This document shows, piece after piece, positions 12,391 to 59,533 of a stretch of 64,000 bases of DNA. The notes below the pieces were generated by a model. That model did no database searches. It was not told the DNA's origin and saw only the letters and a list, made by a program, of their open reading frames with translations. The DNA lies in the NCBI RefSeq assembly GCF_004010195.1, contig NC_057717.1, positions 26,214,509 through 26,278,508 on the forward strand. Direction: 5' to 3'. A program made the position numbers and the translations under genes. The DNA is from Chiloscyllium plagiosum. Taxonomy: Eukaryota. How positions within the stretch are numbered: position 1 is the first letter of the stretch; each line of letters starts with the position of its first letter.

Positions 12391-15300
12391 AATAGAACAT
12401 TGAACATAGAAAAGTACTGCTCAGAACAGGCCCTTTGGCCCACGATGTTGTCCCGAGATTTAATCCTAACGTAAAATCTAATAACTAAACTTACACAACC
12501 CTCAACTCACTACTATCCATGTGCATGTCCAGCAATCGCTTAAATGTCTCCAATGATTCTGCTTCCACCACCAGAGCTGGCAGCGCATTCCATGCATTCA
12601 CAACTCTCTGCGTAAAGAACCTACCTCTGACGTCTCCCTTATACCTTCCTCCTATATCTTCAAACTATGACTTCTCATACTAGTCAATCCTGCCCTGGGG
12701 AAACGTGTCCGGCTATTGACTCTATCTGTTCCTCTCATTATTTTGTACACCTCGATCTGGTCTCCTCTCTCCTCCTTGTCTCCAGAGAGAAAGGTCCAAG
12801 CTTGTTCAACCTTTCTTTGTAAAGCAAGCCCTCCAGTCCAGGCAGCATCCTGGTAAAACTTCTTTGCATCCGCTCCAAAGCCTCTGTATCTTTCCTGTAG
12901 TAGGGCGACCACAAATGCACGCAATATTCCTAGTGTGGTCTCACAGGGAATTGCAGAGCTGCAGCAAAACTTCGCAGCTCTTAAACTCGTTAAACCTGTT
13001 AATGAAAGCCAAAACACCATATGCTTCCCTGACACACTATCTACTTGGGTGGCAACTTTGAGGGATCTACACACTTGCCCACCCAGATCCCTCTGTTCCT
13101 CCACTCTGCCAAGAATCCTGTATTTAATGCTATATTCAGGATTCGAATTTGACCATCCAAAATGCATCACTTCGCATTTATCCAGGTTGAACTCCATCTG
13201 CCATTTCTCAGCCCAACTCTGCATCTTGTCTATGTCGCGCTGCAGCTTACAGTAGCCCTTTATACTACCGACGACACCTCCAAACTTTGTGTCATCACCA
13301 AATTTACTAATCCACCCCACAACCTCCTCATCCAAGTCATTTATAAAATCTACAAAGAGCAGAGGCCCAAGAAAACAGCCCTGTGGTATCCCACTCAACA
13401 TTGTCCTCCAAGCAGAATACTTTCCATCTACAACCACTGTCTGCCTTCTGCCAGCCAGCCAATTCTGAATCTAGATAGCCAAATCTCCCTCTATCCCATA
13501 CTTTCTGACTTTACGAATGAGCCTTCCATGGGGAGCCCTATCAAATGCCTTGCTGAATTCCACTTGCACCACATCCACTGCTTGACCGTCGTCGACCTGT
13601 CTTGACACCTCCTCAAAAAGATCAATAAGATTTGTGAGGCATGACCTGCCCCTCACAAAGCCATGCTGACTGCTTTTAATCACATAATGCTTTGCCAAAT
13701 AGTCATAACTCCTATCTCTCAGAATTTTTTCCAAACTTTGCTGACCGCAGACTTAAGACAGACTGGTCTGTAATTGCCAGGGATTTCCCTATTACCCTTC
13801 TTGAAATAAGGAACAACATTCGCCTCCTTCCAATCCTCCGTTACGACTCCCGTGGAGAGTGAGGAGGCTACATTCCTCGCCAGCGGCTTAGCAACATCCA
13901 TTCTCGCTTCCCGGAGCAGTCGACGATAAATCAGCTCTGGCACTGAGGACTTTTCCAAAAATTGCTAGCACATCAACTTCATCAATCTTGATCTGGTCAA
14001 GACTGATCTGGGCCAGTTCCTCTAAGTTTTCATTTACAACAAGTTCCCTTCCCTTGGTGAAAGTCGAAGAAAAAAATCTATTTAGGGCTTCCCCTATCTG
14101 CTCAGACTCCACGCATAAGTCCCCTCCGCTATCCCTGATCGGCCCTACCTTCTCCCTGATTATTCACTTATTCCTCATGTATGAGAAAAATGCCTTTGAA
14201 TTTCCAAACTTTGCTGACCACAGACCTAAGACTGACATTTGCCTCCTTCCAATCCTCCGGTACGACTCCTTCTTGCCAAGCCTTTTTCGTGCCCCATCAT
14301 GGCTCGCCTCAATCCATTTCTGAGCTCCTTTCTAACAAGTCTGTAATCCTCTAAAGTTGTGCTAGATCCTTGCTTCCTCCACCTTACGTAAGCTGCCTGC
14401 TTCCTTTTGTCGAGAAGTTCCTCTTTTCTCGTCATCCAAGGTTCCTTAATCTTACACCTTCTTACCTATCTCAGAGGAACAAATTTGTGTATCACTCACA
14501 ACAACTGCTCCTTAAACAGTCTCCACATGTCTGCTGTGCCCTTTCTGTGGAACAATTGCTCCCAGTCTGTACTTCCCAACTCCTGTCTAATAGCATCATA
14601 ATTTCCTTTTCCCCAATGAAATATCTTCCCTTGGAAACTGCTCCTTTCACTCTCCCACACTATGCTACATGTGAGGCAGTTGTGATCACTGTCACCAAAG
14701 TGCTCTCCCACCGTTATTTTGGCACCTGCCCTGGCTCGTTGCCGAGCACCAAATCCAATATGGCCTCTCCCCTCGTCGGTATATCTACATTCCGAGCAAG
14801 GAAACCCTCTTGAACACACCTGACAAAAATAGCTTCATCCACTCCATCTGCACTTAGGAGGTTCCAGTCGATATTGGGAAAGTGGAAATCACCCATAACA
14901 ATTACCCTACTTCTGCATTTTTCCAGAACCTGCCCGCCTATGAATTCTTCAATCTCTCTACTGCTATTAGGTGGTCTGTAGAAAACCCCCAAATGCAGTG
15001 ACTGTTCCCTTGCTGTTCCTAACTTCCACCCATACTGACTCAGTAGACAAGCCTTACTCAACAACCTTCTTATCTGTAGCTGTGACGCACTCTCTGATTA
15101 GCAATGCTACACTCCCTCCTCATTTTCCACCCACCCTGTTCTTTTTTAGACTACTTACAGTGTGGAAACAGGCCCTTCGGCCCAACAAGTCCACACCATC
15201 CCTCCATAGACCAACCCACCCAGAACCATTCCCTACATTTACCCCTTCATCTAACACTACGGGCAATTTAACATGGCCAATTCACCATAACTGTACATCT

Positions 15301-25302: not shown

Positions 25303-28300
25303 CCTCTGTATTGACCCTCTGACAGTGCGACACTTCCTCAGTACTGACTCTCTGACATTGCAGTGCTTCCTCCGTCCTGACCCTCTGATAGTGCATCCTT
25401 CCCTCAAACTGACCTTCTGACAGTGCAGCACTCCTCAGAGGTGGCCCTCTGTTAATACAGGAGTCCCTCACTACTGACTGTCCGACAGTGCGGTGATCCC
25501 TCAGTACTGATCCTCTGGCAATGTAGTCGTCCCTCACTACTGACTCTCTGATAGTGCAGCACAACCTGGGTACTGACCCTCTCACAGTGCAGCGCTCCCT
25601 CTGTACTGACGGTCTGACAGTGCAGCACTCCCTCAGTACTGACCATCTGACAGTGCAGCGCTCCCTCAGTACTGACCCTCTGATAGTGCAGCACACCCTG
25701 GGTACTGACCCTCTCACAGCGCAGCGCTCCCTCTGTCCTGACCCTCTGACGGTGCAGCACTCACTCAGCACTGACCCTCTGACAGTGCGGTGAACCTTCA
25801 GTACTCACCCTCTGGAAGTGCAGCACTCTCTTTGTACTGACCATTTGACAGTGCAGCACTCCCTCAGTACTGACCCACTCACAGTGTAGCACTCTCTCGG
25901 TCTTGACTCTCTGACAGTGCAGCACCCCCTCAGTAGTGACCCTCTGATAGTGCAGCACTCTCTTTGTACTGACCCTTTGAAATAGCACTCCCTCAGAACT
26001 GACACTCTCACTGTGTAGTGCTCCCTCCGATCTGAACATTTGAGAGTTCGTGCTCCCTCGGTGCTGACCCTCTGACAGTGCGCACTCCCTCAGTGCTGAC
26101 CCTCTGACAGTGCAACGCTCCCTCCGTGCTGACCCTCTGACAGTGCAGCACTCCCTCAGTACTGACACTCTGACAGTGCAGCACTCCCTTAGTACTGATC
26201 CTTTGACTGTGTAGTGCTCCTCAGAGATGGCCCTCTGGTAATGCAGCAGCCCTCTCGACTGATTGTCCAACAGTGCGGTGATCCCTCAGTACTGACCCTC
26301 TGGCAATGCAGCGGTCCCTCAGTACTGACCTTCTGACAGGGCAGCAATCCCTCAGTATTGACCCTCTGACAGTGCAGCACTCCCTTGGCCCTGCACCCTT
26401 GACAGTGCAGCGACCACTCTGTACTGACCCCCCAATAGTGCGGCACTTCCTCAGCACTGATCCTTTCACACTGCAACATTCCCTCAGAAGTGAGCCTCTA
26501 ACGCCACAGCATTCCCTCAGTACTGACCCTCTGACACTGCATTGCTCTCGCTGTTCTGAGATTTCTACAGTGCAGCACTCCCTCAGTTCTGACCCTGTGA
26601 CAGTGCAGCACTCCCTCAGTACTGACCCTCTGATATTGCAGCACTCCCTCAGTACTGACCCTCTGACAGTGCAGCGCCCCCACAATACAGACCCTCTGAC
26701 AGTTTTGAATTCCCTGAGGACTGAACATCTGAAAGTGCGACACTCCCTCAGTACTGACCTCTGACAGTACTGATGCTCCAACAGTGCAGCTTTCCTTCAG
26801 CACTGACCAATCCAACAGGGCAGCGCTCCCTCAGTACTGACCCTCCGACAGTATGGCACTTCCCTGACCCTCTGACAGGGCTGCATTCCCTCGTGAGTGC
26901 CCCACCGACAACGCAGCACTCCCTTAGTACTGACCGTCTGATACTGCAGCATTCCCCCAGTACTGACCCTCCGACAGAGCAGAACTCCCTCGGTGCTGAT
27001 CATCTGACAGTGTGGCACTGTCTCGATTCTGCACCTCTGATAGTGCAGTAATGCCTCAGTATTGACCCTCTGACAGGGTAGTGTTCTCTCAGTACTGACC
27101 CTCTGATAGTGCAGTGCTCTCTCAATACAGATCCTTTGACAGTGTCGCGTTCCCTCTGGACTGAACATCTGACAGTGCACTGCCCTCTCAGTGATGACCC
27201 TTTGAGAGTGTAGCACTACTCAGTACTGGCCCTCTGGCAATGCAGCAGGCCCTTAATACGGACCCTCTGACCTACAGCGCGGTCTTCCCTCAGGACTGAC
27301 TGTGACACACAGCGCGGTGCTCCCTCAGTACTGGCTGTCAGACACACAGCGCGGAACTCCCACAGTACTAACCCTCTCACAGTGCGGCACTCTGACAGCA
27401 TGCTGATCCCTTAGTACTGACCCTCAGAGAATGAGCACTTCCTCACTACTGACACTCTCACAGCACAGAACTCCCGTAGTACTGACCCTCAGAGAGTGCA
27501 ACTCTCCCTCAGTACTGACCCTCTGACAGTGCAGCACTCCCTCAGTACTGACCCTCTGACAGTGCAGCATCCCTCTGTACTGACCCTCTGACAGTGCAGC
27601 ACTCCCTCAGTACTGACCCTCTGATAGTGCAGCACTCCATCGGTACTGGACTTCAGACAGTGCGACACTCCCTCAGTACTGTTCCTACGACACTGCAGCA
27701 CTCCCTCCATTCTGACTCACTCACAGTGCAGCACTCCCTCAGTCCTGACCGTCTGACAGTGAAGCACTCCCTCAGTACTGACCCTCTCACAGTGCAGCAC
27801 TCCCTCCGTACTGACCGTCTCACAGTGCAGCACTCTCTCGGTACTGACCCTCTGACAGTGCAACACTCCCTCAGTACTGGCCGTCTGACAGTGCGACACA
27901 CCCACAGTACTGTTCCTATGACACTGCTGCACTCCCTCAGTACGGGCTCTTCTGACAATGCAGCACTCCCACAGTACTGAACCTCTGACACTGTGGCATT
28001 GCATGTATACTGACCCTCCCACAGTGTGGCGCAGCTTCATACTGAATTTCAGACAGTTTGGCGCATCCTCTGATCGTTCAGTACTCCCTCAGAACTGACG
28101 CTCTAACAGTGCAGATGCCCTTTGGCCCTGCGCCCCTGACGGTGCTGCAATCCCTCAGTACTGACCATCTAACAATGCTGCGATCACTCAGTACTGACCT
28201 CTGACTGTGCAGCACTCCCTCAGCACTGCTCCTTTGTCACTGCAGCACTCCGTCAGAAATGACACTCTAACACAACAGCATTACCTCAGTACTGACCCTC

Positions 28301-29639
28301 TGATTCTGCAGCACTCTCTTTGTACTGACATTGCTGCAGTGCAGCATTTCCTCAGTACTGACACTCATACAGTGTGGCATTCCCTCAGTATTGACCCTCC
28401 GACAATGTGGCACTCCCTCAATACAGATGCTCGAACAGTGTAGCACTCCCTCGGTACTAGCCCTCCCACAGAGCAGAACTCCCTCAGTACTGACACTCTG
28501 ACAGTGCGGCACTGCCTCATTCCTGCACTTCTGATTGTCCTGCAATGCCTCAGTACTGACCCTTTGGCAGTGCAGCACTCTCTCAGAACTGACCCTCTGA
28601 AACAACACTTCCTCAGAACTGACACACTGACCGAGTAGCTCTCCCTCAGTAATGACCCTTTGACAGTACATCACTCTCTCAGTACTGACCCTCTGGCAAT
28701 GCAGCAGTCCATAGCGTGATGCTCCCTCAGTACTAACCCCCTCACAGCGTGGTGATCCCTCAGTACTAACCCCCTCACAGTGTGGTGCTCCTTCAGTTCT
28801 TACCCTTTCACAGTGCAGCGCTCCCTCAGTAGTAACCCTCTCACAGTGCGGCACTCTGACAGTATGGACATCCATTAGCACTGAACCTCAGAGAGTGCGC
28901 ACTTCATCATTACTGACCCTCTCACTGCACAACAATCCCTCCACCCTGACTGTCTGACAATGCTGCACTCCCTCCACACTGATCCTCTGATAGTAATGCA
29001 CTCTCTCAGTACTGACCCTCTCACAGTGTGGAAGTGGCCCTATACTGACCCTCCGACAGTGTGGCAATCCCTCGGTACTGACCTTCCAAAATGCAGCGCA
29101 CCCTCAGTACTGGCCCTCTGACAGTGTGGCTCAATCTCAGGACAAAACCTCTGACAGTACAGCACTCCGTCGGAACTGACATTCTGGCAGTACAGCGCTC
29201 CCTCAGGTGTAACTCATTGACAGTGTAGTACTCCTTCAGTACTGACCCATTGACAGTGTAGCACTCCCTCAATACTGACACTCTGCCTCGGTCCTGCACC
29301 TCTGATAGTCCAGCAGTGCCTCAGTACTGACCATATGACAGTGTCGCACTCTCTCTGTACTGCCCCTCTGACAGTGAAGCACTCCCTCAGTACTGACCAT
29401 CTGACAGTGCAGCACTCCCTCAGTACTGACCCTCTGGCAATGAGGCATCCCCCAGTACTGATCCTCTGATGGTGCAGTGCTCTCTTAGTGCAGATCCACT
29501 GATAGTGTGGCTTGCCCTCTAGACTGAACCTCTGACAGTGCGGTGATCCCTCAGTACTGACCCTCTGGCAATGTAGCAGTCCCTCAGTACTGACCCTCTG
29601 ACAGTGCAGCACTCCCTTGGTGCTGACCCTCTGACAGTG
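25303..29639. repeat. 33-bp minisatellite array, about 4.3 kb and 130 diverged units (cagtactgaccctctgacagtgcagcactccct)
   Basis: Directly visible. The 11-codon period produces the RGSVLRECCTV and TVQHSLSTDPL ORFs. Confidence 0.96.
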
Positions 29640-30610
29640 TGGTTCTCCAATCGCCACCAAGACAGAACCTCACTGGTCCTCACCAACCTCCATATACATC
29701 GCAGCATCCGTCATCATTTCCGCCACCTCCAAACAGACCCCACCACCAAGGATATATTTCCCTCCACACCCCTATCAGCGTTCTGGAAAGACCACTCACT
29801 CCGCGACTCCCTCGCCAGGTTCCCAAACCGCATCAACGCAACCTCCACTCCCGGCACCGTCTCCTGCAACCGCAAGACATGCAAAACTTGCGGCCACACT
29901 TCCCCCATCACTTCCCACCAAGGCCCCAAAGGATCCTTGCATATACACCACAAATTCACCTGCACCTCCACACACACCATTTACTGCCTCCGCTGCTCCC
30001 GATGTGGCCTCCTCTACATTGGGGAGACAGGCCGCCTACTTGCGGAACGTTTTAGAGAACACCTCTGGGACACCCGGACCAACCAACCTAACCACCCCGT
30101 GGCTGAACTCTTTAACTTCCCCTCCCACTCCACCAAGGACATGCAGGTCCTTGGCCTCCTCCATCGCCCGACCATGGCAACACGACGGCTGGAGGAAGTG
30201 CGCCTCATCTTCCATCTAGGAACCCTCCAACCACAAGAGATGAATGCAGATTTCTCCAGCTTCCTCATTTCCCATCCCCCCACCTTATCTCAGTCCCAAC
30301 CCTGGACCTCAGCACCACCTTGTTGACCTGCAATCTTCTTCCTGACCTCTCCGCCCCACCTCCTCTCCGGCCTATCACCCGCACCTTAACTTCCTTCCAC
30401 CTATCTCATTTCCAACGCCCCTCCCCCAAATCCCTCCTCCTTACCTTTTATCTTAGCCTGCTTGGCACACTTTCCTCATTCCTGAAGAAGGGCTCATGCC
30501 CGAAACGTCAATTCTCCTGATCGTTTGATGCTGCCTGACCTGCTGCGCTTTTCCAGCAACGCATTTTTCAGCTCTGCTCTCCAGCGTCTGCAGTCCTCAC
30601 TTTCTCCTCC
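29640..30610 (+). mobile_element. Penelope-like retroelement 3' part: GIY-YIG endonuclease plus terminal repeat
   Basis: ORF 29604-30326 contains CNRKTCKTC and IYCLRCSRCGLLYIGETGRLLAERFREH; terminal repeat at about 30475-30610. Confidence 0.92.
30477..30513 (+). ncRNA. Minimal type I hammerhead ribozyme motif in the Penelope terminal repeat
   Basis: CTGAAGA-a-GGGC-tcat-GCCC-GAAACGTC: catalytic core, stem II, palindromic ACGT stem III and a GUC cleavage triplet. Confidence 0.7.
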
Positions 30611-37300: not shown

Positions 37301-37800
37301 NNNNNNNNNNNNNNNNNNNNNNNNNNNNNNNNNNNNNNNNNNNNNNNNNNNNNNNNNNNNNNNNNNNNNNNNNNNNNNNNNNNNNNNNNNNNNNNNNNNN
37401 NNNNNNNNNNNNNNNNNNNNNNNNNNNNNNNNNNNNNNNNNNNNNNNNNNNNNNNNNNNNNNNNNNNNNNNNNNNNNNNNNNNNNNNNNNNNNNNNNNNN
37501 NNNNNNNNNNNNNNNNNNNNNNNNNNNNNNNNNNNNNNNNNNNNNNNNNNNNNNNNNNNNNNNNNNNNNNNNNNNNNNNNNNNNNNNNNNNNNNNNNNNN
37601 NNNNNNNNNNNNNNNNNNNNNNNNNNNNNNNNNNNNNNNNNNNNNNNNNNNNNNNNNNNNNNNNNNNNNNNNNNNNNNNNNNNNNNNNNNNNNNNNNNNN
37701 NNNNNNNNNNNNNNNNNNNNNNNNNNNNNNNNNNNNNNNNNNNNNNNNNNNNNNNNNNNNNNNNNNNNNNNNNNNNNNNNNNNNNNNNNNNNNNNNNNNN
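37301..37800. other. Assembly gap (500 N); smaller gaps at 51545-51634 and 61725-61783
   Basis: N runs in the sequence. Confidence 1.
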
Positions 37801-38228
37801 TCAAATTTAAAAATCCAGAACCAATATCATAATTTCACTAAATATTAAAATGCAACATTTTTAACTTGGGATTTATCCACTTCCGTTTTCTAAAGGAGCA
37901 GAATGGTACACATTATGTTCAGTAAAAAAAGTAAAGTTTAATGTGAAAGTTGCCTCCATGTTTCCAGTCTACAACGAGGACATTCTGGCCATTTGTCACT
38001 GCTGATGGTAATGTCACAACCCTGGCCTCTTCCCACCTTATCTGACTTAATCAGAATACAATATCCTTTGGTCCATCTTTTTCTTAATCAGCTACCTAGC
38101 TATCCTATCTTCAGATGCATCATTAATGCCCCCAATGGTGTTTGTTCATTACCAATCAAAGCCTGACATTGATGTAACTGGATCTGGATTACACATGGGA
38201 TGATTTGTGTTTTAATCTCACCGCTCAC

Positions 38229-38733
38229 CTTTCTCCTTGTGGATGGAGGAGAAAGTGAGGTCTGCAGACGCTGGAGATCAAAGTTGAAACTTTATTTCTG
38301 GAACAGCACAGCAGGTCAGGCAGCATCCAGGGAACAGGAGATTCGACGTTTCGGGCACAGGCCCTTCTTCCTGAAGAAGGGCCTCTGCCCGAAACGTCGA
38401 ATCTCCTGTTCCCTGGATGCTGCCTGACCTCCTTGTGGATGGAGTCTCTCAGCGGAGTCGGTAGATTCTGATGGTACACCACACATTCATAAGTATCGCC
38501 ACTCAGCTAGGCTTCAGTAAAAATGTCTAATTTGCTGATCATGCTGTCGGGATTCTGTCCAGGCTGGTCAGCAATCTCTGATTTCAGAGGCTTCTTTTCT
38601 TGCATCCAGGTAACGTTAATTCCAGAAGGAAGATTGGACACAACGCAGGTTAATGTCACCGTCGCCTCCAGTAAGACTTGTTCTACTGGCGGTGGGAGGA
38701 TTTTAATGGTGTTAGGGTGGCACTCGGTATCTT
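38229..38733 (-). pseudogene. IGHM: IgM Cmu3 exon with a premature stop and a transposon insertion
   Basis: [34 protein letters not shown]...EA*LSGDTYECVVYHQNLPTPLRDSIHKE. TAG at 38507-38509, donor G|gtgagc. The exon is 309 bp once the insert and one TSD are removed. Confidence 0.93.
38249..38428. mobile_element. Penelope terminal-repeat hairpin insertion with a 16-bp target-site duplication
   Basis: ctccttgtggatggag at 38233-38248 and 38429-38444; 57-bp inverted arms 38314-38370 and 38373-38429; hammerhead motif at 38371-38398. Confidence 0.9.
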
Positions 38734-40700
38734 CTATGAAACAAAAATCAAAGTCAATGAAAAATGCCTCTTTATGATACAAACATCCAATCTTCAGATT
38801 ACTCCCTCACAGGGTGAAGTCACCACCTTCAAAATGGCAACTCCAACTATTGCTGAAACGATGCTTATTATTGTTGATGTATTTTGATTCGTGAAAGCAT
38901 TTGTGATTACCTATAACATACCCTGTGTAATTATTCCTAAAGAACACTGGCTTTGTAACAAGTGAAACCTGTGAAAAAAGTAAAATCATCGAAGATACCA
39001 TCATGTAACCCATGGAATTACCTTTCTTCCAGAGGTTGTCTCTCACTTAACACCATTTATTGATACTTGTGACAAGAGTAATCTGAATATAATGAGTCAA
39101 TTTCCACGATCATAACCCTTGGTGCAAATGCTGCTGGTCATGCTGCTTGCCAAATCACATCCCAAATTTTGGACAAATTATAATAAATAATAATTATTCT
39201 CTTTGCAGAGTTCTAAAGTTTTACAGGAGCGGTGGACCACCATAGAAATTCTGTTCATTATATTTAAAGTGATCGAAAATACTTTGCGTCATTGATGTGA
39301 TGTCATCCCCTAATTTATGTTATTGTTCCTCGTGGGCTGAGTTTAGAATGGATCTGAAAACAAGACACTGAGTACAGCATTGGATATCGAGAAGGACACC
39401 CATCTCCTTAAGACTTTCCTTCCATTCAGTTAGTTCATGACTGGTCTGTACTTTCACTTTATTTACCAAGCAACATTTTTAAATTTCTTCATAGAACAGG
39501 AGAGAAAACCACAAGCAAAAGCGTCTTAAATTAATCTACAAATGCGATTGAAATGTGCACTAGTTTTATAGACATCCACTACTCACTGTGTAAACATTGT
39601 CACCCCAAACCAGGCTAAATCAGCCTGTCTCGAGTTCCTAGTTCATTCACCTCTATTGTAGCATTCTTACCAGAATTTATTCTCCTGCCTCATCCACTAA
39701 TTACAGAGAGCATCTTAAAGAAGCTCAGTGAGATCACATTTATCCCAGTTAATCAAATGTGATACCCACTTGTTCTGTGGTCTGATCCCATAAATGAAGT
39801 TAAAGAGCTCAGTACAAGATAAAAATCGATGTCGTACAATGTCCAAGGCCAAAAGATTATTCCTGAGCAGGAAATGAAGCACTGAACGCATTTTGATTTA
39901 TTTTCAAGTGAGGGTCACTGCATATTTTAAACACGTCATTTTGAGACCACAACATCATAAGATAGAGGATCAGAATAAGGCTGTTCGGCCAATCCTGAGT
40001 TTAGATCAGAATGGTGCTGAAAAAGCACAGCAGGTCAGGCAGCATCCGACGAGCAGGAAAATCGACGTTTCGGGCTAAAGCGATTCTACTGTCTTCTCCC
40101 CGTATTAAACAAGAGCCGATCTATCTCTGGCTTGAATACACGCAATGGCCTGGCCTCCACAGCCCTCTGCAGCAACAAGTTCCACAGACTCGTCACCCTC
40201 TGGCTGAAGAAATTCCTCACCATCTCAGTTCTAAGCGGTGCCCCTTTGACCCTAAGACTTTGCCCTTGGGTCCTAGTCTCACCTACCAGTCAAAACATCT
40301 ATTCCACGTTCACTCTACCTCAGTCTCTCAGTATTTTCTATGTTTCAATCAGATATCTCTCCAATACCCCCCCTCCACTCCCAAACTTATCCTTGAAGCG
40401 GCTACCAGGCAAGGATTCAGCACTCTGAATGCCGCTCCCAGCATGATGAGGCAGCAAACTATTTAACAAAGCTCACTGTCCATATATCTATCTTCAACAG
40501 AGGGGAAACATGCTTTTCTGTTTTGCCAAAATCTTGAATTATGAGTATTGCTAATGTATCACTCAAACTGAAATGAGATACGTGGCATGTTGGGAAATGA
40601 GAAGCTGTACCGTGCTGTTTACTAAGCCTGATAAATTAGTGTGTTTGATTCACATCAGAATTCAGAATGACTTGTAGCTCTCTCAGTATGTGTCTCTTAC

Positions 40701-41008
40701 TCTGGAGTGCGGTGATGTTTTTACTTTGAGTGTTCTCTCCATGAGTGACCTGGCAGATATAGACTGCGCTGTTGAACCATTCACCATAAGGGGCCATCAG
40801 CCGACTCGTCACCGAGAAGTTCGGTGACTCACACCGGGAGATGTGAAGAAGCCAGAATCCAAGGGTCGGCCATTTTTCAACCAACTCACGGAGATTGACT
40901 TCGGATGGAAATCGATGATTGAACAGACGACAGTTGCAAACTTGCTGCTTGCGATTTCTTCACTGGAGCTCACAGTTAGGAGAAGAGTTGCTTGGAGAAT
41001 ATTTGGAC
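40701..41008 (-). pseudogene. IGHM: IgM Cmu2 exon, frameshifted
   Basis: [40 protein letters not shown]...GFFTSP, then a frameshift, then [41 protein letters not shown]. 308 bp, donor A|gtaaga. Confidence 0.93.
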
Positions 41009-41199: not shown

Positions 41200-44100
41200 A
41201 GTCAAGGAGGCAAAGAAAATATAGACCGGTAACATCAGAAGGGAGATAGCAACGTTGGATGGTATTCGTTTTAATGACAGAGTCTGATGAACAAGGCAGA
41301 TGAATTACCGGCATAAATAAGGAAATGATGCCGTTGCTATCACGGAGACATTTTGAGATTGGGGCAGGAGTGGCTATTCAATATTCCAGGATTTAGTGCC
41401 TTCAGGGGAGACAGGGAACGATGGAAAAGGATGGGGGCGGGGGTGTGTGGTACAGAATGTTGCTTCTGTCGCAATTCTGACAAGGGTAATTTAGGCTGTA
41501 AAGAGAAATGAAATCACGGTTACCTCCTCGAACAAAGGCAAATGGACAGTACTTCAAAACCAAAATACAGCAAACATAACTACTGGGAGAGCACGATAGA
41601 CCTTACTGTAGGTCCAAAAGACCAAGTGCAAATATACAGGCAAATTTCAGAGAATCGTAAATTAAATAGGGGAATGAGAACAGAGGTTTTTAACTTCCTC
41701 AGCGTCGGCTTGGATATTCATTTTGACAAAAGTTTAGAGGGAGCAGAATTCTGAAAATGTCCCCAGGAGAATATTTTTAAAAAGTATGTTAAATACAGAG
41801 AGGGGTGAACCTGGACTTAACTTTAGGGAATGAAGTCGACACAGTGGGTAAAACATCAATGGACAGTGCAGACAGTGATCATAGATCTGTTGGATTCCAG
41901 ATTGTTCTGGAAAGTGATTGAAATTGGCCCAAAGTTCTGAAGGGAGAATGTTAAGAAGATCAGGTAATGATTTGACCAGAGTGGACCGGAAATCTAAATC
42001 AGAGCAGTGTGACACATTTAAGAAAGAAATAAGAAAAGCACAAGGAGGTCATTTCCCAGGAAGCGACTGCGTGGGATCAAGAATGTAGCGGGCTCTGGAC
42101 CAAAGGAATGGAGGGTGAGATAAAGAGAAACAAGGGAGACTTCCGGTCTATACTGAAATCTCAAAACAAGAGAAACTATTCTGGAGTACAGAACGTGCAA
42201 GGGGGAGTTTGAAAGAAAGAGGTATTAGGAGAGCAAAAGGGACCATGAGAAAATAATAGCAGTCAAAATAAAAGAAAATACTTTTAAAAGTTACAGGCTC
42301 ATTCATAATAAAAGACTAATTGGGGAAACAGTAATGCCCATTAAGTGTTATTACTGGAGTGGAGCCAGAGGATGAGGTTGCAGTCGAAACGAATGTGTTG
42401 TGTCAGTGTTGACTAGTAAGAGGGACAATGTGGGGACAGAAATCATAGAGGAGTGTTGTGATGTACTTTCAGAAATTAGGGCACATGATGTGATGTTCTG
42501 TGTTGTCTTGCTGAATGACAATTATTTCCAGGGCAGATGAAATGTATACCAAGCTGTTGAGTGATGCAAAGGATGAAATAATTGGGACGCTGACAATAAT
42601 TTAGTGTTACTGTCTGGCCACAGCAGTTGTGCCAAGTGAGTGTAGATCAGCCAACGTTGCACTATTATGCAGGCCGAAAGAAGGGATAAACAATGAAAAC
42701 ACAGATTTGTCAAGCTAGTCTCAGTGGTAAGGAAACTGTTGGAACTATTGAGAAACAGAATTAGTCTTCATTTGGAAGATCAATCAACAATTTTCAGCAC
42801 AGTTTTATTGAGAAGAAGGCATGTATAACAATTTGATGGTAGTTTTCAGAGAGATAACTCGATGTCCAGATGATAGCAATAATCAGAGCCAATGGGATAC
42901 AAGTTAATTTGACAGATTGGATCTAGAAGTGGCTGAGTGGTGGGAGCAGGAGATAATGGTCATTAGGTGTCTGCGTGAATGGAAATCTATTTCTCGTGGT
43001 GTTGTGCAGGGATTAGTGTTGATTTCCTTGCTGTTTCTCTTATATACCAATGATTGAGACTCAAATGTAGGAGGGTTAACCAGTAAATTCACAGATGAAA
43101 GGAAACTCGTCATGTTGGTAAGTCATGATCATAATGGCTTTAGATTGCAGGAGGATATACAAGGATTGGTTACATGTGAAGAAAAGTTGCAAATGGAAAT
43201 CATTCTGGATAAATGTAAGGTGATTATATTCGGCAGAAGAAACTGTGAGGTATTATATTTTGAATGGTGGAAACCTGGAAAGGACTGAGGATCTTTGGTG
43301 TAGGTACCCACCGATCCCCTATAGTACTGTGTCGTCAGGATAAAGAGGCTAAGAAGGTGGGGAAAGTATTTGCTTTTATTATCCGAGACATTGACAATGA
43401 AGAGTAGGGAGATGATACTGGAACTTAATAAAACTCAGGTTAGGTCATACCATACTGAAGCGTTGTGTGCACGTTATTGAAGGACCTACAGTGTTATACA
43501 TTGGGTGTTGTTTGCTATCCTGGTGATTTGTGCTGTTTCAGTCACAATGTTTATAAGAAAATCTAAGGTAGTGATCATGTGCAGTGCTGGGTCCTCTACG
43601 TTTTGTCATTTACATAAATGATTTGGATGCGAGCATAAGAAAGTTAGCAAGTTTGCAGATGACACCAAAATTGGAGGTGAAGTGGAGAGCGAAGAGGGTT
43701 ACCTCAGATTACAACAGGATCTTGACGAGATGGGCCAATGGGCTGAGAAATGGCAGATGGAGTTGAATTCAGATAAATGCGAGGTGATGCATTTTGGGAA
43801 AGCAAATCTTAGGAGGACTTATACACTTAATGGTAAGGTCCTAGGGAGTATTCCTGAACAAAGAGACCTTGGAGTGCAGTTTCATAGCTCCTTGAAAGTT
43901 GAGTTGCAGATAGGTAGGATAGTGAAGAAGGCATTTCGTACGCTTTCCTTTTTTGGTCAGAGTATTGAGTACAGGAGTTGGGAGGTCATGTTGCGGCTGT
44001 ACAGGACATTGTTGAGGCCACTGTTGGAATATTGCGTGCAATTCTGGTCTCCTTCCTATCGGAAAGATGTGGTGAAACTTGAAAGGGCTCAGAAAGATTT

Positions 44101-45060
44101 TCGAGGATGTTGCCAGATTTGGAGGATTTGAGCTATAGGGAGAGGCTGAACAGGCTGGGGCTGTTTTCCCTGGAGCGTCGGAGGCTGAGGGGTAACCTTA
44201 TAGAGGGTTGCAAAATTATGAGGGGCATGGATAGGGTAAATAGACAAAGTCTTTTCCCTGGAGTCGGAGAGTCCAGAACTAGACAGCATAGTGATAGGGT
44301 GAGAGGGGAAAGAGATAAGAGACCTAGCGGGCAACTTTTTCACAGGGTGGTACGTGTATGGAATGAGTTACCAGAGGAAGTGGTGGAGGCTGGTACAATT
44401 GCAACGTTTAAGAGGCATTTGGATGGGTATATGAATAGGAAGAGTTTGGAGTGATATGGGCCGGGTGCTCGTAGGTGGGACTAGATTGGATTGGGATAAC
44501 TGGTCGGCATGGACGGGTAGGACCGAAGGGTCTGTTTCCATGCTGTACATCTCTATGACTCTATGAATGTGATTACACTCAAGACAGCATTGATGAGATT
44601 TGTCAGGTTTTTTCCTGGGTTGGAGTGTTTTAGTTATGAAACTAGATTAGATAGACGGGGGTCTTCCTTGGAGCAGAAGAGAATTAGGGAGATGATTATC
44701 ATGATGTCTGGAATTATTTTAGGCATAGGCAGGGTAAACTGGACAAAACCTTTCCCTTTGATGGAGAGATCAATGTCTCAGGAGCACAGTGTAAAGGTAA
44801 GGCCAGGAGGTTTAGAGCGGATCTGGGAGGAAAACAAAATCAAACAGAGGGTGGTGTGAGTCTGGAGCTCCGTGCCTATAATTCATGTAGAGACTGAGCC
44901 CCTCATAATAAGTATGAAGAATTTAGATGCATCCTTGCAAAGGCAAGTCACACAAGGCAATGGATCAAGTGCTGGCACATGATATTGGAATAGTTAGGTG
45001 GCTGTTATTGATATCTGTGGACTGGATGGACCAAAGGACCTTTTTCCTCTGCTGAATAAG
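41200..45060 (+). mobile_element. Old, degraded near-full-length CR1 ORF2 in the Cmu1-Cmu2 intron, split by a younger CR1
   Basis: Remnant endonuclease and RT motifs are colinear, with a 3' tail near 45050. Confidence 0.7.
43583..44563 (+). mobile_element. Younger 5'-truncated CR1 LINE
   Basis: Peptides LGPLRFVIYINDLD, WAEKWQME and LLRPLLEYCVQFWSP; tail ctctatgactctatga. Confidence 0.92.
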
Positions 45061-45145
45061 GTGATTCTGTGAAAACTGTTCTAAATAATAACTTATTCAT
45101 GTTAATCACAGATGATCTGTTTATCTCAGTTCCCACAACACTTAC

Positions 45146-45451
45146 CCAGTCATGGCATTTCTTTGCTCTTGTGTGACTTGCTGTGTTGAACCTCACAGTA
45201 GATTTTGCTGGGGCAATCTACTGCTGACTCGGGCAGGGTTAACTGGCTGCTCAGGGTGTAGGTTCCCTTCTTGTTTCTCACTGATGGCTAAGTCATCAAT
45301 CCAGTCGTGATCAGCTCCCCACCTTTCTTCTAGGTTACCTTGGTGACATCAGGGGAATAGTCCATCGCTAAACAACCAAAGATTACAGAACCGGTGTTGT
45401 GCTCCTGACAGGAGGAGACCAGGCCATAAAGCGTGGGGGGAGACGGTGTCT
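45146..45451 (-). pseudogene. IGHM: IgM Cmu1 exon with three in-frame stops
   Basis: [87 protein letters not shown]...EMP*L. 306 bp with ag and gtaagt ends; stops at 45330-45332, 45288-45290 and 45150-45152. Confidence 0.94.
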
Positions 45452-57335: not shown

Positions 57336-57860
57336 ATAACACCGCAAGAAAATTTTATAACAGTTTTTAACCTGCTTGTCATCAATAAAATTAACAAAAT
57401 AAATGACTAAATACAATCATGGTAAGAACATTATGTATACAGGAATATACTCAAGAAATCAATAATGAGATTTTAACATATTTTAATCATGTTTGCTAAT
57501 ATTTTGAATATCTTTAAATTCTTAGCATTTGTTGTCAATAATAAGACTCACACTCGGGGTTTCACTGACATTAAACATTATTTATACCTGCCTGATTAAG
57601 AGACTTTAAGTATTCCAAGTAACCCAGCCACACAGAATGCCCATCTGATCAAAAAATGAGATACACTGAGCATCTGACTCCATCAACACCATTTTAACTA
57701 TTTGCTGAGCCTTAATTAAAGCCTATAAGCAGCTTGAACAAAAATCAATCCGAACCTAACCAAACTCAGCTCAGAATCTGAGTTTAATTTAATTCAGGAA
57801 TTATTCCGATGGATAGAACGTTAACAGAAAAAAGTTACTCAGAAAGTTCAAGGGTCTTAC

Positions 57861-57923
57861 CTGAAGGCACTGTCACCATGGTCCCTTGGCCACAGTAATC
57901 AAGATAGTCTCTGGACTGGTTCA
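57861..57923 (-). pseudogene. IGHJ: JH segment with WGxG mutated to CGQG
   Basis: NQSRDYLDYCGQGTMVTVPS, donor G|gtaaga. Confidence 0.92.
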
Positions 57924-57961
57924 CACAATAACTAGCTCTGCATAAAACAAACACAAAACTA
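57924..57961 (+). other. Degenerate JH recombination signal (22-bp spacer)
   Basis: Heptamer CACAATA (57924-57930), 22 bp, nonamer ACAAAACTA (57953-57961). Confidence 0.6.
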
Positions 57962-58260
57962 ACATTATTTTACATATTCGGAACCACAAGCAAAATAACG
58001 TCACGATAAATTTTCATCACATTATAATTGCGCCAGTGGATACTGATCATTCTTGATAAGTTTTTATATAATTTTATACTTCACAGAGTATCTCATGAGC
58101 TGATTCTCAAAATGAATAACTGGTGTATCAATAATTGTCATCACTTTTACAAATTAGCAGTGATATTTGTATAAAACCCCACAGAATTAATACTGCACTG
58201 CAAATTAATATGATTTGAGGAAGTAATCGCTGACTAGTTTCAAACAAATAGGACTGAATG

Positions 58261-58288
58261 GGTTTTTGTATTGAATAGAATTGCAGTG
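58261..58288 (-). other. 12-spacer RSS 3' of the joined VD segment
   Basis: Heptamer CACTGCA (58288-58282), spacer ATTCTATTCAAT (12 bp), perfect nonamer ACAAAAACC (58269-58261). Confidence 0.85.
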
Positions 58289-58601
58289 CCACTCCACTGT
58301 ATTGCACAGTAATAGATGGTGGTGTCTTCGATCTTCAGGCTCCCCATGTCCAAAGCGAAAATGTTTTTTTATGTGTCTTTGGACGCAGTAAATCGACCCT
58401 TAATTGCCTGTGCATAGTTATTGCCGGATGAACTATAGTAGTAAACCAGCCACTCCACACCCTGTCCGGGTACCTGTCGGACCCAGTGCATGTAGCTGCT
58501 GCTCAGATCGAACCCACTGGTTTTACAGGTCAGTTTCAGGCTGCCTGCGGGACGGCCAGTTTTTGCCTCTGGCTGAGTCAAAACAACCTCCGACTGGACA
58601 C
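58289..58601 (-). pseudogene. IGHV: IgM-type VH exon, germline-joined to D sequence, with one premature stop
   Basis: [52 protein letters not shown]...[35 protein letters not shown]; TAA at 58369-58371. Confidence 0.95.
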
Positions 58602-58728
58602 CTTTAAAAAGAAAACAAATAAACCATGAGCATTAATGCTGATGAAATGATGGCTGAGTCTTTTACATTCCTCGGTAGACTAACATTGAGACAGTAACAA
58701 AGAGAGACTTGAACAAAAAAACACTCAC

Positions 58729-58777
58729 ATGATAAGAAAGTCAGTAACAAACTGAGAAAAAGTGTCGACACAATCAT
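58729..58777 (-). pseudogene. IGHV: VH leader exon
   Basis: MIVSTLFLSLLLTFLS(C), 49 bp, donor T|gtgagt, 127-bp intron to the V exon. Confidence 0.93.
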
Positions 58778-58861
58778 TCTGATAACTTATGGGAAACGGT
58801 TCTGTCAAGATCTTTCTAAACAAAGCCGCCAAAAGTGTTGAATTATGGTCTAGTGCCCAGG

Positions 58862-58984
58862 ATTTATATGGCCATCGGAAGAGGCAGACTTACAGATTCC
58901 GCATGTTGGTGTTCTGCTGGAGGCTGAGACTGCATCCTGGTATCAGCTTGCATAGCCCGAACACATCGGCTCACGTATTTACAT
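58862..58984 (-). promoter_or_regulatory. Putative VH promoter: TATA box plus octamer-like element
   Basis: TATAAAT at 58868-58862, 85 bp before the ATG; ATGTAAAT (7/8 octamer) at 58984-58977. Confidence 0.5.
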
Positions 58985-59116
58985 GAGGTTACGGTTAAAC
59001 ATGGACATACACGCATCTTGGGATATTTGTTTTGCTGAATAGCTTCTTTGGAAGTAAATTTGAGTAGCTTCAGGTCTGTTTCAGATGATAGTTGCAAGTA
59101 TTTTGTTTTAAAAACA

Positions 59117-59533
59117 TTCAATTGGAAGTTAGCACCCTTCATTTCAACATTCATTCCCAAGCAGATAAAACTAAAATCAAAGTTCAAACATATTACGAGC
59201 TAATAAAACAATTGAGCTTTTTTTTTCCTGGACACTGCAAGTCTCTGTCGCACGACAAAATAACATGTAATTCATACGAAACATTTCAAAATTCAGTTTA
59301 GGCAACTGAAAACAGAGTGTGTCCAAAGTGATTATATTTAGAATATTCAATTAGAAATTAACTCCCTTTAATCCTGCATTCAACTACAAGCAGATAAAGC
59401 TAAAAAGAACTTCAATAATATTATTAGCCAACAAAATTAGTGACTTTATTTTTAGTGACACTCAAAGTTTCTCTCACATTACAAAATAACATACCATTTC
59501 TAATCTGCGTCTCGAAATTCAGTTTAGGCAACC
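59117..59533. repeat. Diverged tandem duplication (about 228-bp period) upstream of the VH promoter
   Basis: Shared blocks caagcagataaa, acaaaataacat and aaattcagtttaggcaac each occur twice. Confidence 0.8.

What the first reader, a model, noticed from the sequence alone, without database searches (positions are those of the whole stretch)
58261..58314. VH is already joined to D in the germline (VD(D)-J configuration)
Seen: YYCA (TAT TAC TGT GCA) runs straight into ATACAGTGGAGTGG and then CACTGCA-12-ACAAAAACC. There is no 23-spacer V RSS, the usual terminal Arg codon is missing, and only about 365 bp with no recognisable D separates this point from J. Established: shark IgM clusters are V(23)-(12)D1(22/23)-(12)D2(12)-(22/23)J, and germline-joined genes attributed to RAG activity in germ cells are known in cartilaginous fish. 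Inference: this is an inherited VDD join that needs only one 12/22 step to reach J.
Basis: partly seen in the sequence, partly recalled or inferred. Interest (0 to 1): 0.85.

Follow-up and report, generated by a model that had tools for sequence, protein, structure and literature searches.

The report
Half-joined shark antibody pseudogene
This is a shark IgM heavy-chain gene cluster whose V segment was fused to its D segment(s) in the inherited genome, a peculiarity long known in sharks, and the cluster has since decayed into a dead gene.

Summary
On the minus strand an IgM-type VH ends TAT TAC TGT GCA (58314-58303). It runs into 14 D-like bases and then CACTGCA-12-ACAAAAACC (58288-58261). There is no 23-spacer V signal, and one ~350-bp spacer leads to a JH (57908-57861).

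Exact contigs from three samples in two studies carry this junction. A related species has a contig with the same layout, so the structure is germline. A close bamboo-shark V model reads through a normal CACAGTG-23-nonamer flank that is unlike ours. Three other shark V models read V, then 5-9 variable codons, then the same 12-spacer flank as ours. The VD(D)-J reading is therefore supported.

The claim that one 12/22 step remains is not supported:
- Paralogues show that our J has lost 14 bases, including its signal heptamer.
- J has Cys in place of Trp.
- V has an in-frame TAA, seen in the window only.
- Cmu1 has two stops, Cmu2 a frameshift and Cmu3 a stop.

This is a decayed member of a kind known since the 1980s. 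Whether D1, D2 or both contributed could not be tested. The scan's own unchecked notes list other partly joined IgM clusters elsewhere in this genome.

The parts
58729..58777 (-). Leader exon (MIVSTLFLSLLLTFLS plus the first base of the Cys codon), followed by a gtgagt donor
   Evidence: 17 of 17 residues identical to the leader of C. punctatum model P0024.
58303..58601 (-). VH exon (IgM type), from after the acceptor AG to the GCA after Cys; in-frame TAA at 58371-58369 in FR3
   Evidence: Pfam V-set E 1.8e-7. 86% identical to P0024. TAA located. All paralogue contigs read TCA there (table 3, place 58370).
58289..58302 (-). Junction, ATACAGTGGAGTGG: D-derived bases; the first 1-3 may be a V end or a mutated AGA
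   Evidence: Length and content differ from the junctions of P0025, P0026 and P0003, which share the same downstream signal.
58261..58288 (-). 12-spacer recombination signal: heptamer CACTGCA (58288-58282), spacer (58281-58270), nonamer ACAAAAACC (58269-58261)
   Evidence: It is the only 9/9 nonamer signal in the window.
57910..58260 (-). D-J-type intersegment spacer. Its 3' end holds the remnant of the J signal: nonamer-like AGTTATTGT at 57933-57925, then only 15 nt of spacer
   Evidence: paralogue contigs align over 57921-58228 and 58064-58274. Exact contigs cover 57922-58331/58346 in X1, X6 and X3.
57909..57910 (-). Site of a 14-nt loss that removed the J-signal heptamer; the boundary is ambiguous by 2 nt because of a GA microhomology
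   Evidence: table 7: the loose end behind 57909 in X1 (35 letters) and X3 (13 letters) begins ACAGTG...; its letters 15-30 match 57910-57925 at 15 of 16 (aligned by eye). The exact X1 contig 57627-57950 carries the deleted state.
57861..57908 (-). JH coding segment YLDYCGQGTMVTVPS, with TGT (57894-57892) where Trp is expected; gtaaga donor follows
45105..45449 (-). Cmu1-like exon with in-frame TAG at 45332 (Trp position) and at 45290 (Tyr position)
   Evidence: tblastn with Mustelus asterias P0031: 65.5% identity, E 2e-40. Stops located.
40639..40988 (-). Cmu2-like exon; its N-terminal and C-terminal halves are in different frames (frameshift)
38228..38806 (-). Cmu3-like exon with in-frame TAG at 38509-38507
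   Evidence: Pfam C1-set E 5.3e-6. Stop located.

Best explanation
This is an IgM heavy-chain mini-cluster (leader-V...J...Cmu) of a shark in which the V segment was joined to D segment(s) in the germ line. RAG-type recombination removed the V 23-signal, the V-D spacer and the inner D signals. It left a coding joint (V trimmed to TGT GCA A, then about 13 D bases). The 3' 12-spacer signal of the last D, the D-J spacer and J were left untouched. That is the 'VD-J / VDD-J' configuration known from cartilaginous fish. The join may have been made in this cluster or in the cluster it was copied from. The cluster later became a pseudogene: the J signal lost its heptamer, so the last step can no longer be made by normal RAG cutting, and V, J and Cmu1-3 carry disabling changes. 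Shown: the anatomy, its presence in several samples, the unlike flank of paralogous and related unjoined V genes, and the lesions. Inferred: RAG as the agent, and the D origin of the 14 bases.
For: 1. Anatomy: the V end is followed by 14 nt, then CACTGCA-12-ACAAAAACC, then 352 nt, then JH. Neither a V 23-signal nor an RSS-flanked D lies between.
2. Spacing: nurse shark segments lie about 400 bp apart, and somatic VDD-J products are about 0.8 kb from leader intron to J (PMC2435157 passages). Our V-to-J gap equals one such interval.
3. Germline status: exact contigs cover 57922-58331 (X1, 0 differences; X6, 1) and 57922-58346 (X3, 2). That is three samples from two studies. X1 also has 57627-57950 with 0 differences, which overlaps the first contig and runs through J.
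4. Paralogous V contigs align only as far as 58306. They then run on unlike for 192 nt (X1 record 5, X6 record 18) or 89 nt (X9 record 27).
5. Organism B has an 865-nt contig that aligns to 57921-58228, then has 69 other letters, then aligns to 58303-58610. That is the same V-short junction-spacer layout (record 26).
6. Related gene models: six named elasmobranch V models run 5 or more residues past the Cys. One of the six, C. punctatum P0024, is our nearest V (86%, identical leader). It back-translates to CACAGTG-23-nonamer, unlike our flank. Three of the six (C. punctatum P0025 and P0026, S. torazame P0003) read V, then 5-9 different codons, then a flank that back-translates to CAC(T/A)GCA-12-ACAAAAA. 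P0025 aligns with ours down to 58249 and, after a frame change, to 58230. The other two of the six (P0027, P0031) are full VDJ.
7. The class is established: reviews PMC5192425 and PMC4279169 and paper PMC2193156 (passages read).
Against: - No unjoined D1 or D2 of this species could be read. The D origin of the 14 bases, and 'VDD' versus 'VD2', are therefore inferred.
- The heptamer matches the consensus at only 4 of 7 positions, although it keeps CAC.
- The junction contains ACAGTG, which could be taken for a remnant of the V heptamer.
- The cross-species flank comparisons are back-translations of gene-model read-throughs, not DNA.
- The tissues and individuals behind the runs are coded, and X1 may be the assembly's own sample.
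- Strictly, only the X3 contig has 31 or more letters on the V side of the V/D border; X1 and X6 have 29.
- 709 laid records were not shown.
- The TAA in V is carried by none of the contigs that cover place 58370 (table 3 counts 6, 6, 8 and 6 in X1, X6, X3 and X9).
Confidence: 0.8

Rival explanations
1. The flank is the V gene's own, degenerate signal (TACAGTG as a mutated heptamer, a 25-nt spacer, then the nonamer). An ordinary, non-RAG deletion removed the D segments.
For: ACAGTG sits 3 nt after GCA. The cluster is a decaying pseudogene that has suffered at least one other small deletion.
Against: The spacer would be 25 nt, not 22-24 (one search found no such hit). The nearest V model, P0024, has a back-translated 23-spacer flank with no likeness to ours. 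Paralogue V contigs diverge completely right after the Cys codon. The same CACTGCA-12-nonamer flank follows different junctions in P0025 and P0026, and CACAGCA in P0003. Paralogue contigs that hold J and the spacer also hold the nonamer region 58247-58274 (X3 record 10; loose end at 58247).
Confidence: 0.06
2. V was joined directly to D2 in a single V(23)/D2-5'(12) event that looped out D1. The gene would then be VD2-J rather than VD1D2-J.
For: The junction is only 14 nt. The 12/23 rule allows V to join the 5' signal of D2 (recalled RSS layout of shark clusters: V-23, 12-D1-22/23, 12-D2-12, 22/23-J). Its 3' part GGAGTGG recurs next to another V in organism B (loose end before 58302).
Against: The 5' part, ATACAGTGG, resembles the GCAGTGGG-type motif back-translated from the AVG(S/N) junctions of P0025 and P0031. 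That could be a second D. Nothing decisive is available.
Confidence: 0.3
3. The join is somatic (a lymphocyte rearrangement intermediate) or an assembly artefact.
For: VDD-J is a common somatic intermediate in nurse shark thymus (PMC2435157 passages). The tissues of the runs are unknown.
Against: The identical junction and spacer occur in contigs of three samples from two studies. The same layout occurs in a second species (record 26). A signal-less J and broken C exons argue against a locus that rearranges in lymphocytes.
Confidence: 0.02

Closest known systems
Partly germline-joined IgM clusters (VD-J, VD-DJ) of horn shark, skates and chimaeras
   Same: V is fused to D in inherited DNA, the remaining signal and J are still apart, and the cluster has its own Cmu exons (reviews PMC5192425 and PMC4279169; PMC2193156; passages read).
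   Different: This copy is from another shark; its nearest V models are from Chiloscyllium punctatum. It is multiply disabled and its J signal has lost the heptamer. The primary horn-shark papers were not available here; I recall them only.
Somatic VDD-J ('2R') intermediates of nurse shark IgM loci
   Same: Same product layout and size: V-D-D joined and the D2-J spacer of about 400 bp kept (PMC2435157 passages).
   Different: Those arise in single thymocytes or B cells. Ours is inherited and found in several samples.
Nurse shark IgM1gj and other fully joined VDJ genes
   Same: A germline product of joining within a cluster. Whale-shark P0027 and Mustelus P0031 gene models also read as full VDJ.
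   Different: Those are complete, in-frame VDJ, and IgM1gj is expressed in neonates (PMC4279169 passage). Ours stops at VD(D) and is not translatable.
Chicken VH pseudogenes (germline-fused VD)
   Same: Fused V-D without J joining, in non-functional genes (PMC2193156 passage).
   Different: The chicken copies lack signals and serve as gene-conversion donors in a translocon locus. Ours keeps a 12-signal, a J and C exons of its own. No donor role was tested.

Membership tests
Germline partly joined (VD-J/VDD-J) IgM cluster of cartilaginous fish | The V coding end is fused to D-like bases, with no V 23-spacer signal | tested here: met
   Contrast with the back-translated 23-signal of P0024.
Germline partly joined (VD-J/VDD-J) IgM cluster of cartilaginous fish | The 3' signal of the last D (12 spacer) is retained, followed by one D-J spacer and a separate J | tested here: met
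   the spacer is 352 nt, against about 400 bp per interval in nurse shark (PMC2435157). That the 12 spacer marks D2 is recalled, not taken from a call.
Germline partly joined (VD-J/VDD-J) IgM cluster of cartilaginous fish | The same junction is present in inherited DNA of different animals | tested here: met
   exact or near-exact contigs in X1, X6 and X3 (3 samples, 2 studies). The tissue and identity of the animals are not known to me.
Germline partly joined (VD-J/VDD-J) IgM cluster of cartilaginous fish | The junction bases match germline D1 and/or D2 of unjoined clusters of the species | not testable with these tools
No eukaryote genome collection is on hand.
Germline partly joined (VD-J/VDD-J) IgM cluster of cartilaginous fish | The cluster has its own Cmu exons downstream on the same strand | tested here: met
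   Cmu1 at 45449-45105, Cmu2 near 40988, Cmu3 at 38806-38228. Cmu4 was not found; an N run lies at 37301-37800 and was left alone.
Recombination-competent or expressible Ig gene | Open V, J and C frames, and a J signal with a CAC/GTG heptamer at the coding border | tested here: not met
   TAA in V, TGT for Trp in J, two TAG in Cmu1, a frameshift in Cmu2, a TAG in Cmu3. The J heptamer is lost. The need for CAC is from PMC2193808 passages.
Canonical unrearranged V-D1-D2-J cluster | A V 23-signal and two RSS-flanked D segments between V and J | tested here: not met

The most novel reading that the evidence does not exclude
VD-J clusters that end in the off-consensus CAC(T/A)GCA 12-signal may form an old, recurrent class shared by bamboo-shark-like and cat sharks. 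The weak heptamer of the last D would slow the D-to-J step. That would make VDD-J both the commonest somatic intermediate and the form most often frozen when RAG acts in germ cells. The 14-nt loss that straddles the J heptamer/coding border, with a 2-nt microhomology, could then be the scar of a failed last step: a germline cut resealed as an 'open-and-shut' joint.
Probability: 0.15. Interest if true: 0.5.

Novelty: new member of a known kind. Interest (0 to 1): 0.3.

Why it matters
Germline-joined antibody genes are the standing evidence that the RAG recombinase has acted in shark germ cells. Each one is a dated fossil of such an event. This copy adds a clean example in which the retained signal, spacer and J can be read base by base, and a counterpart in a second species may allow dating. 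Because it is dead, it says nothing about a special function of pre-joined antibodies. For annotation, it should be labelled a VD(D)-J IgM pseudogene, not a functional V or a rearranging cluster.

Tried and rejected
Steps that led nowhere:
All cross-species flank comparisons therefore rest on back-translation of protein read-throughs.
- A third protein search, aimed at the tail of P0025, returned 2 of 2 candidates and nothing new.
- Lee et al. 2008 (PMC2590587), which describes the nurse shark pseudogene groups, is not held.
- The figures and supplements of PMC2435157 that show germline D1/D2 and junctions are not readable here. They may bear on the D assignment.
- The search of earlier findings by sequence was blank, as was the seven-word search.

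Readings considered and rejected:
- The V's own signal with a 25-nt spacer (see rivals).
- A monophyletic family of joined genes. The V tree has 18 rows, with 12 of 15 inner branches open. It puts our V with the unjoined P0024 and the frameshifted P0002 (support 87/83, below the star threshold), not with P0025, P0026 or P0003. The tree is too unresolved to prove independent joins.

Not done:
- Expression was not tested. Reads were laid on DNA contigs, and no listed holder is RNA.
The V exon piece was searched alone.

Full report
**What is there.** The gene lies on the minus strand.
- A leader exon (58777-58729) encodes MIVSTLFLSLLLTFLS.
- After an intron, the V exon (58601-58303) encodes an IgM-type VH (Pfam V-set).
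- The V exon ends TAT TAC TGT GCA at 58314-58303.
- ATACAGTGGAGTGG follows (58302-58289), then CACTGCA (58288-58282), a 12-nt spacer and ACAAAAACC (58269-58261).
- After 352 more bases comes a JH coding segment (57908-57861, YLDYCGQGTMVTVPS) with a gtaaga donor.
- It is the only V in the window: 1 WVRQ hit, with the YYC and GQGT hits on the same strand.

**Is it more than chance?**
- A scan for CAC-heptamers with nonamers at 11-13 or 22-24 nt gave 25 weak hits in 64 kb. Only this one has a perfect nonamer.
- The pattern search gave 2 matches at up to 1 mismatch against 0.55 expected. This site is the only exact one.
- The motif alone is weak evidence. Its place, 14 nt after a V end and one spacer before a J, is what counts.

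**Germline or somatic.** I laid Logan contigs of three organism-A runs (3 samples, 2 studies) and one organism-B run on 57401-59200.
- Exact contigs cover 57922-58331 in X1 (0 differences) and X6 (1 difference), and 57922-58346 in X3 (2 differences).
- They run from the J-signal remnant through the spacer, the 12-signal and the junction into V.
- By the tool's 31-letter rule all three bridge the D/signal border. Only X3 bridges the V/D border; X1 and X6 have 29 V letters.
- In X1 a second exact contig (57627-57950) overlaps the first and carries J.
- X1 may be the assembly's own sample, so X3 (another study) is the independent support.
- A somatic clone cannot explain an identical junction in several data sets.

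**Is the flank the V's own signal?**
- Paralogous V contigs align to our V only down to 58306, the Cys codon. They then run on unlike for 192 nt (X1 record 5, X6 record 18) or 89 nt (X9 record 27).
- Contigs that carry J-side sequence also align to the spacer and the nonamer region (X3 record 10: 57476-57911 and 58064-58274; loose end at 58247).
- 709 records were not listed, so these are examples, not a census.

**Related species.** Protein searches found elasmobranch V gene models whose prediction runs on past the V end. Six named models run 5 or more residues past the Cys.
- P0024 (C. punctatum) is our nearest V (86%, leader 17 of 17 identical). It reads CAR-DHSERSQVWTHSKT, which back-translates to CACAGTG, a 23-nt spacer and a (T/A)(C/G)NAAAACN nonamer-like triplet run (consensus ACAAAAACC). 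That is a normal V signal, unlike ours.
- P0025 and P0026 (C. punctatum) and P0003 (S. torazame) read V, then 5-9 different codons, then a stretch that back-translates to CAC(T/A)GCA-12-ACAAAAA.
- P0025 aligns with our translation through the junction to 58249 and, in another frame, to 58230.
- P0027 (whale shark) and P0031 (Mustelus asterias) read as complete VDJ.

Variable junctions before a constant 12-signal are what repeated V-D joining predicts. This is inference from back-translation; I could not read the DNA.

Organism B also has an 865-nt contig that aligns to 57921-58228, then has 69 other letters, then aligns to 58303-58610. That is the same layout at about 85% likeness (record 26).

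**History.** In a V tree of 18 rows our V sits with the unjoined P0024 and the frameshifted P0002 (support 87/83), not with the three joined models. However, 12 of 15 inner branches are unresolved. Independent joins are likely but not shown.

**Which D?** The spacing fits one interval of about 400 bp (PMC2435157 passages). By my recollection of shark cluster layout, a 12-spacer 3' signal marks D2. The 3' part GGAGTGG recurs after another V in organism B (loose end before 58302). The 5' part resembles a motif back-translated from the P0025 and P0031 junctions. Without germline D segments, VD1D2 versus VD2 stays open.

**State of the cluster.**
- Paralogue contigs that align to J up to 57909 continue ACAGTGTTACATTCTCTGGACTGGGTCACA (X1, 35 letters; X3, first 13 letters).
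- With the base at 57909 this spells the heptamer CACAGTG on the plus strand, directly at the J coding border. Letters 15-30 match our 57910-57925 at 15 of 16 (by eye).
- Our copy has therefore lost 14 nt: the heptamer and 8 nt of spacer. The boundary is ambiguous by a GA microhomology.
- A heptamer beginning CAC is needed for recombination (PMC2193808 passages). The D-side signal keeps CAC but matches only 4 of 7.
- J has TGT where Trp is expected.
- V has TAA at 58371-58369, where every laid contig covering place 58370 reads TCA (table 3 counts 6, 6, 8 and 6 contigs in the four runs). None of those contigs carries the window's letter, so the stop is unconfirmed outside the assembly.
- Cmu1 (45449-45105) has TAG at 45332 and 45290.
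- Cmu2 changes frame, and Cmu3 has TAG at 38509.
- J to Cmu1 is 12.4 kb, against 6.3-6.8 kb in nurse shark. Reverse-transcriptase fragments lie in the C-region introns.

**Comparison with what is known.** Reviews and a primary paper state that cartilaginous-fish IgM clusters may be partly (VD-J, VD-DJ) or fully joined in the germline, attributed to RAG in germ cells. They also state that joined horn-shark H genes were not seen expressed (PMC5192425, PMC4279169, PMC2193156; passages only). My searches for 'VDD-J' with 'germline' and for bamboo-shark IgM joining found no paper on this locus. The species is coded, so I cannot say whether it is in print.

The scan's own unchecked notes list other partly joined IgM clusters in this genome, and a second note on this same junction.

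**Verdict.** This is a real, inherited VD(D)-J join of a known kind, in a dead cluster.

Noticed in passing
window 57909-57910 (J signal border): The 14-nt loss removes the J heptamer and straddles, within a 2-nt GA microhomology, the exact border where RAG cuts. It could be an ordinary small deletion or the scar of a resealed germline cut.
   Followed up: partly
window 57909 to 58236 (joints): One contig in each of the four runs, including organism B, links J directly to about 58236, skipping some 326 nt of the spacer. Some paralogous clusters therefore seem to have a much shorter D-J interval, or ours has an old insertion.
   Followed up: no
window 58339 to 58510 and 58228 to 58345 (joints): Paralogue contigs show a 170-nt internal V skip (X6, X3). 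Another links the spacer straight to FR3 (X6). There may be further broken or joined V copies in organism A.
   Followed up: no
window 57892-57894, 45330-45332, 38507-38509: Three expected Trp codons of the cluster are hit: TGT in J, TAG in Cmu1 and TAG in Cmu3. That Trp is expected in Cmu3 is my inference from the usual C-domain pattern.
   Followed up: partly
window 25303-29639: A 4.3-kb minisatellite with a 33-bp unit (about 65-79% matches). It gives long spurious open frames on both strands.
   Followed up: partly
window 12655-13470, 43622-44128, 29577-30323: Retroelement fragments: Pfam RVT_1 at the first two, and a weak GIY-YIG hit (below cut-off) at the third. One RVT_1 fragment lies between Cmu1 and Cmu2.
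   Followed up: partly
proteins P0025, P0026 (C. punctatum), P0003 (S. torazame), P0027 (R. typus), P0031 (M. asterias): Public gene models labelled hypothetical or V region appear to be read-throughs of VD-J clusters (first three) or germline VDJ genes (last two). P0002 (C. punctatum) has a frameshifted FR3 and groups with our V, so it may be the counterpart of this pseudogene.
   Followed up: partly
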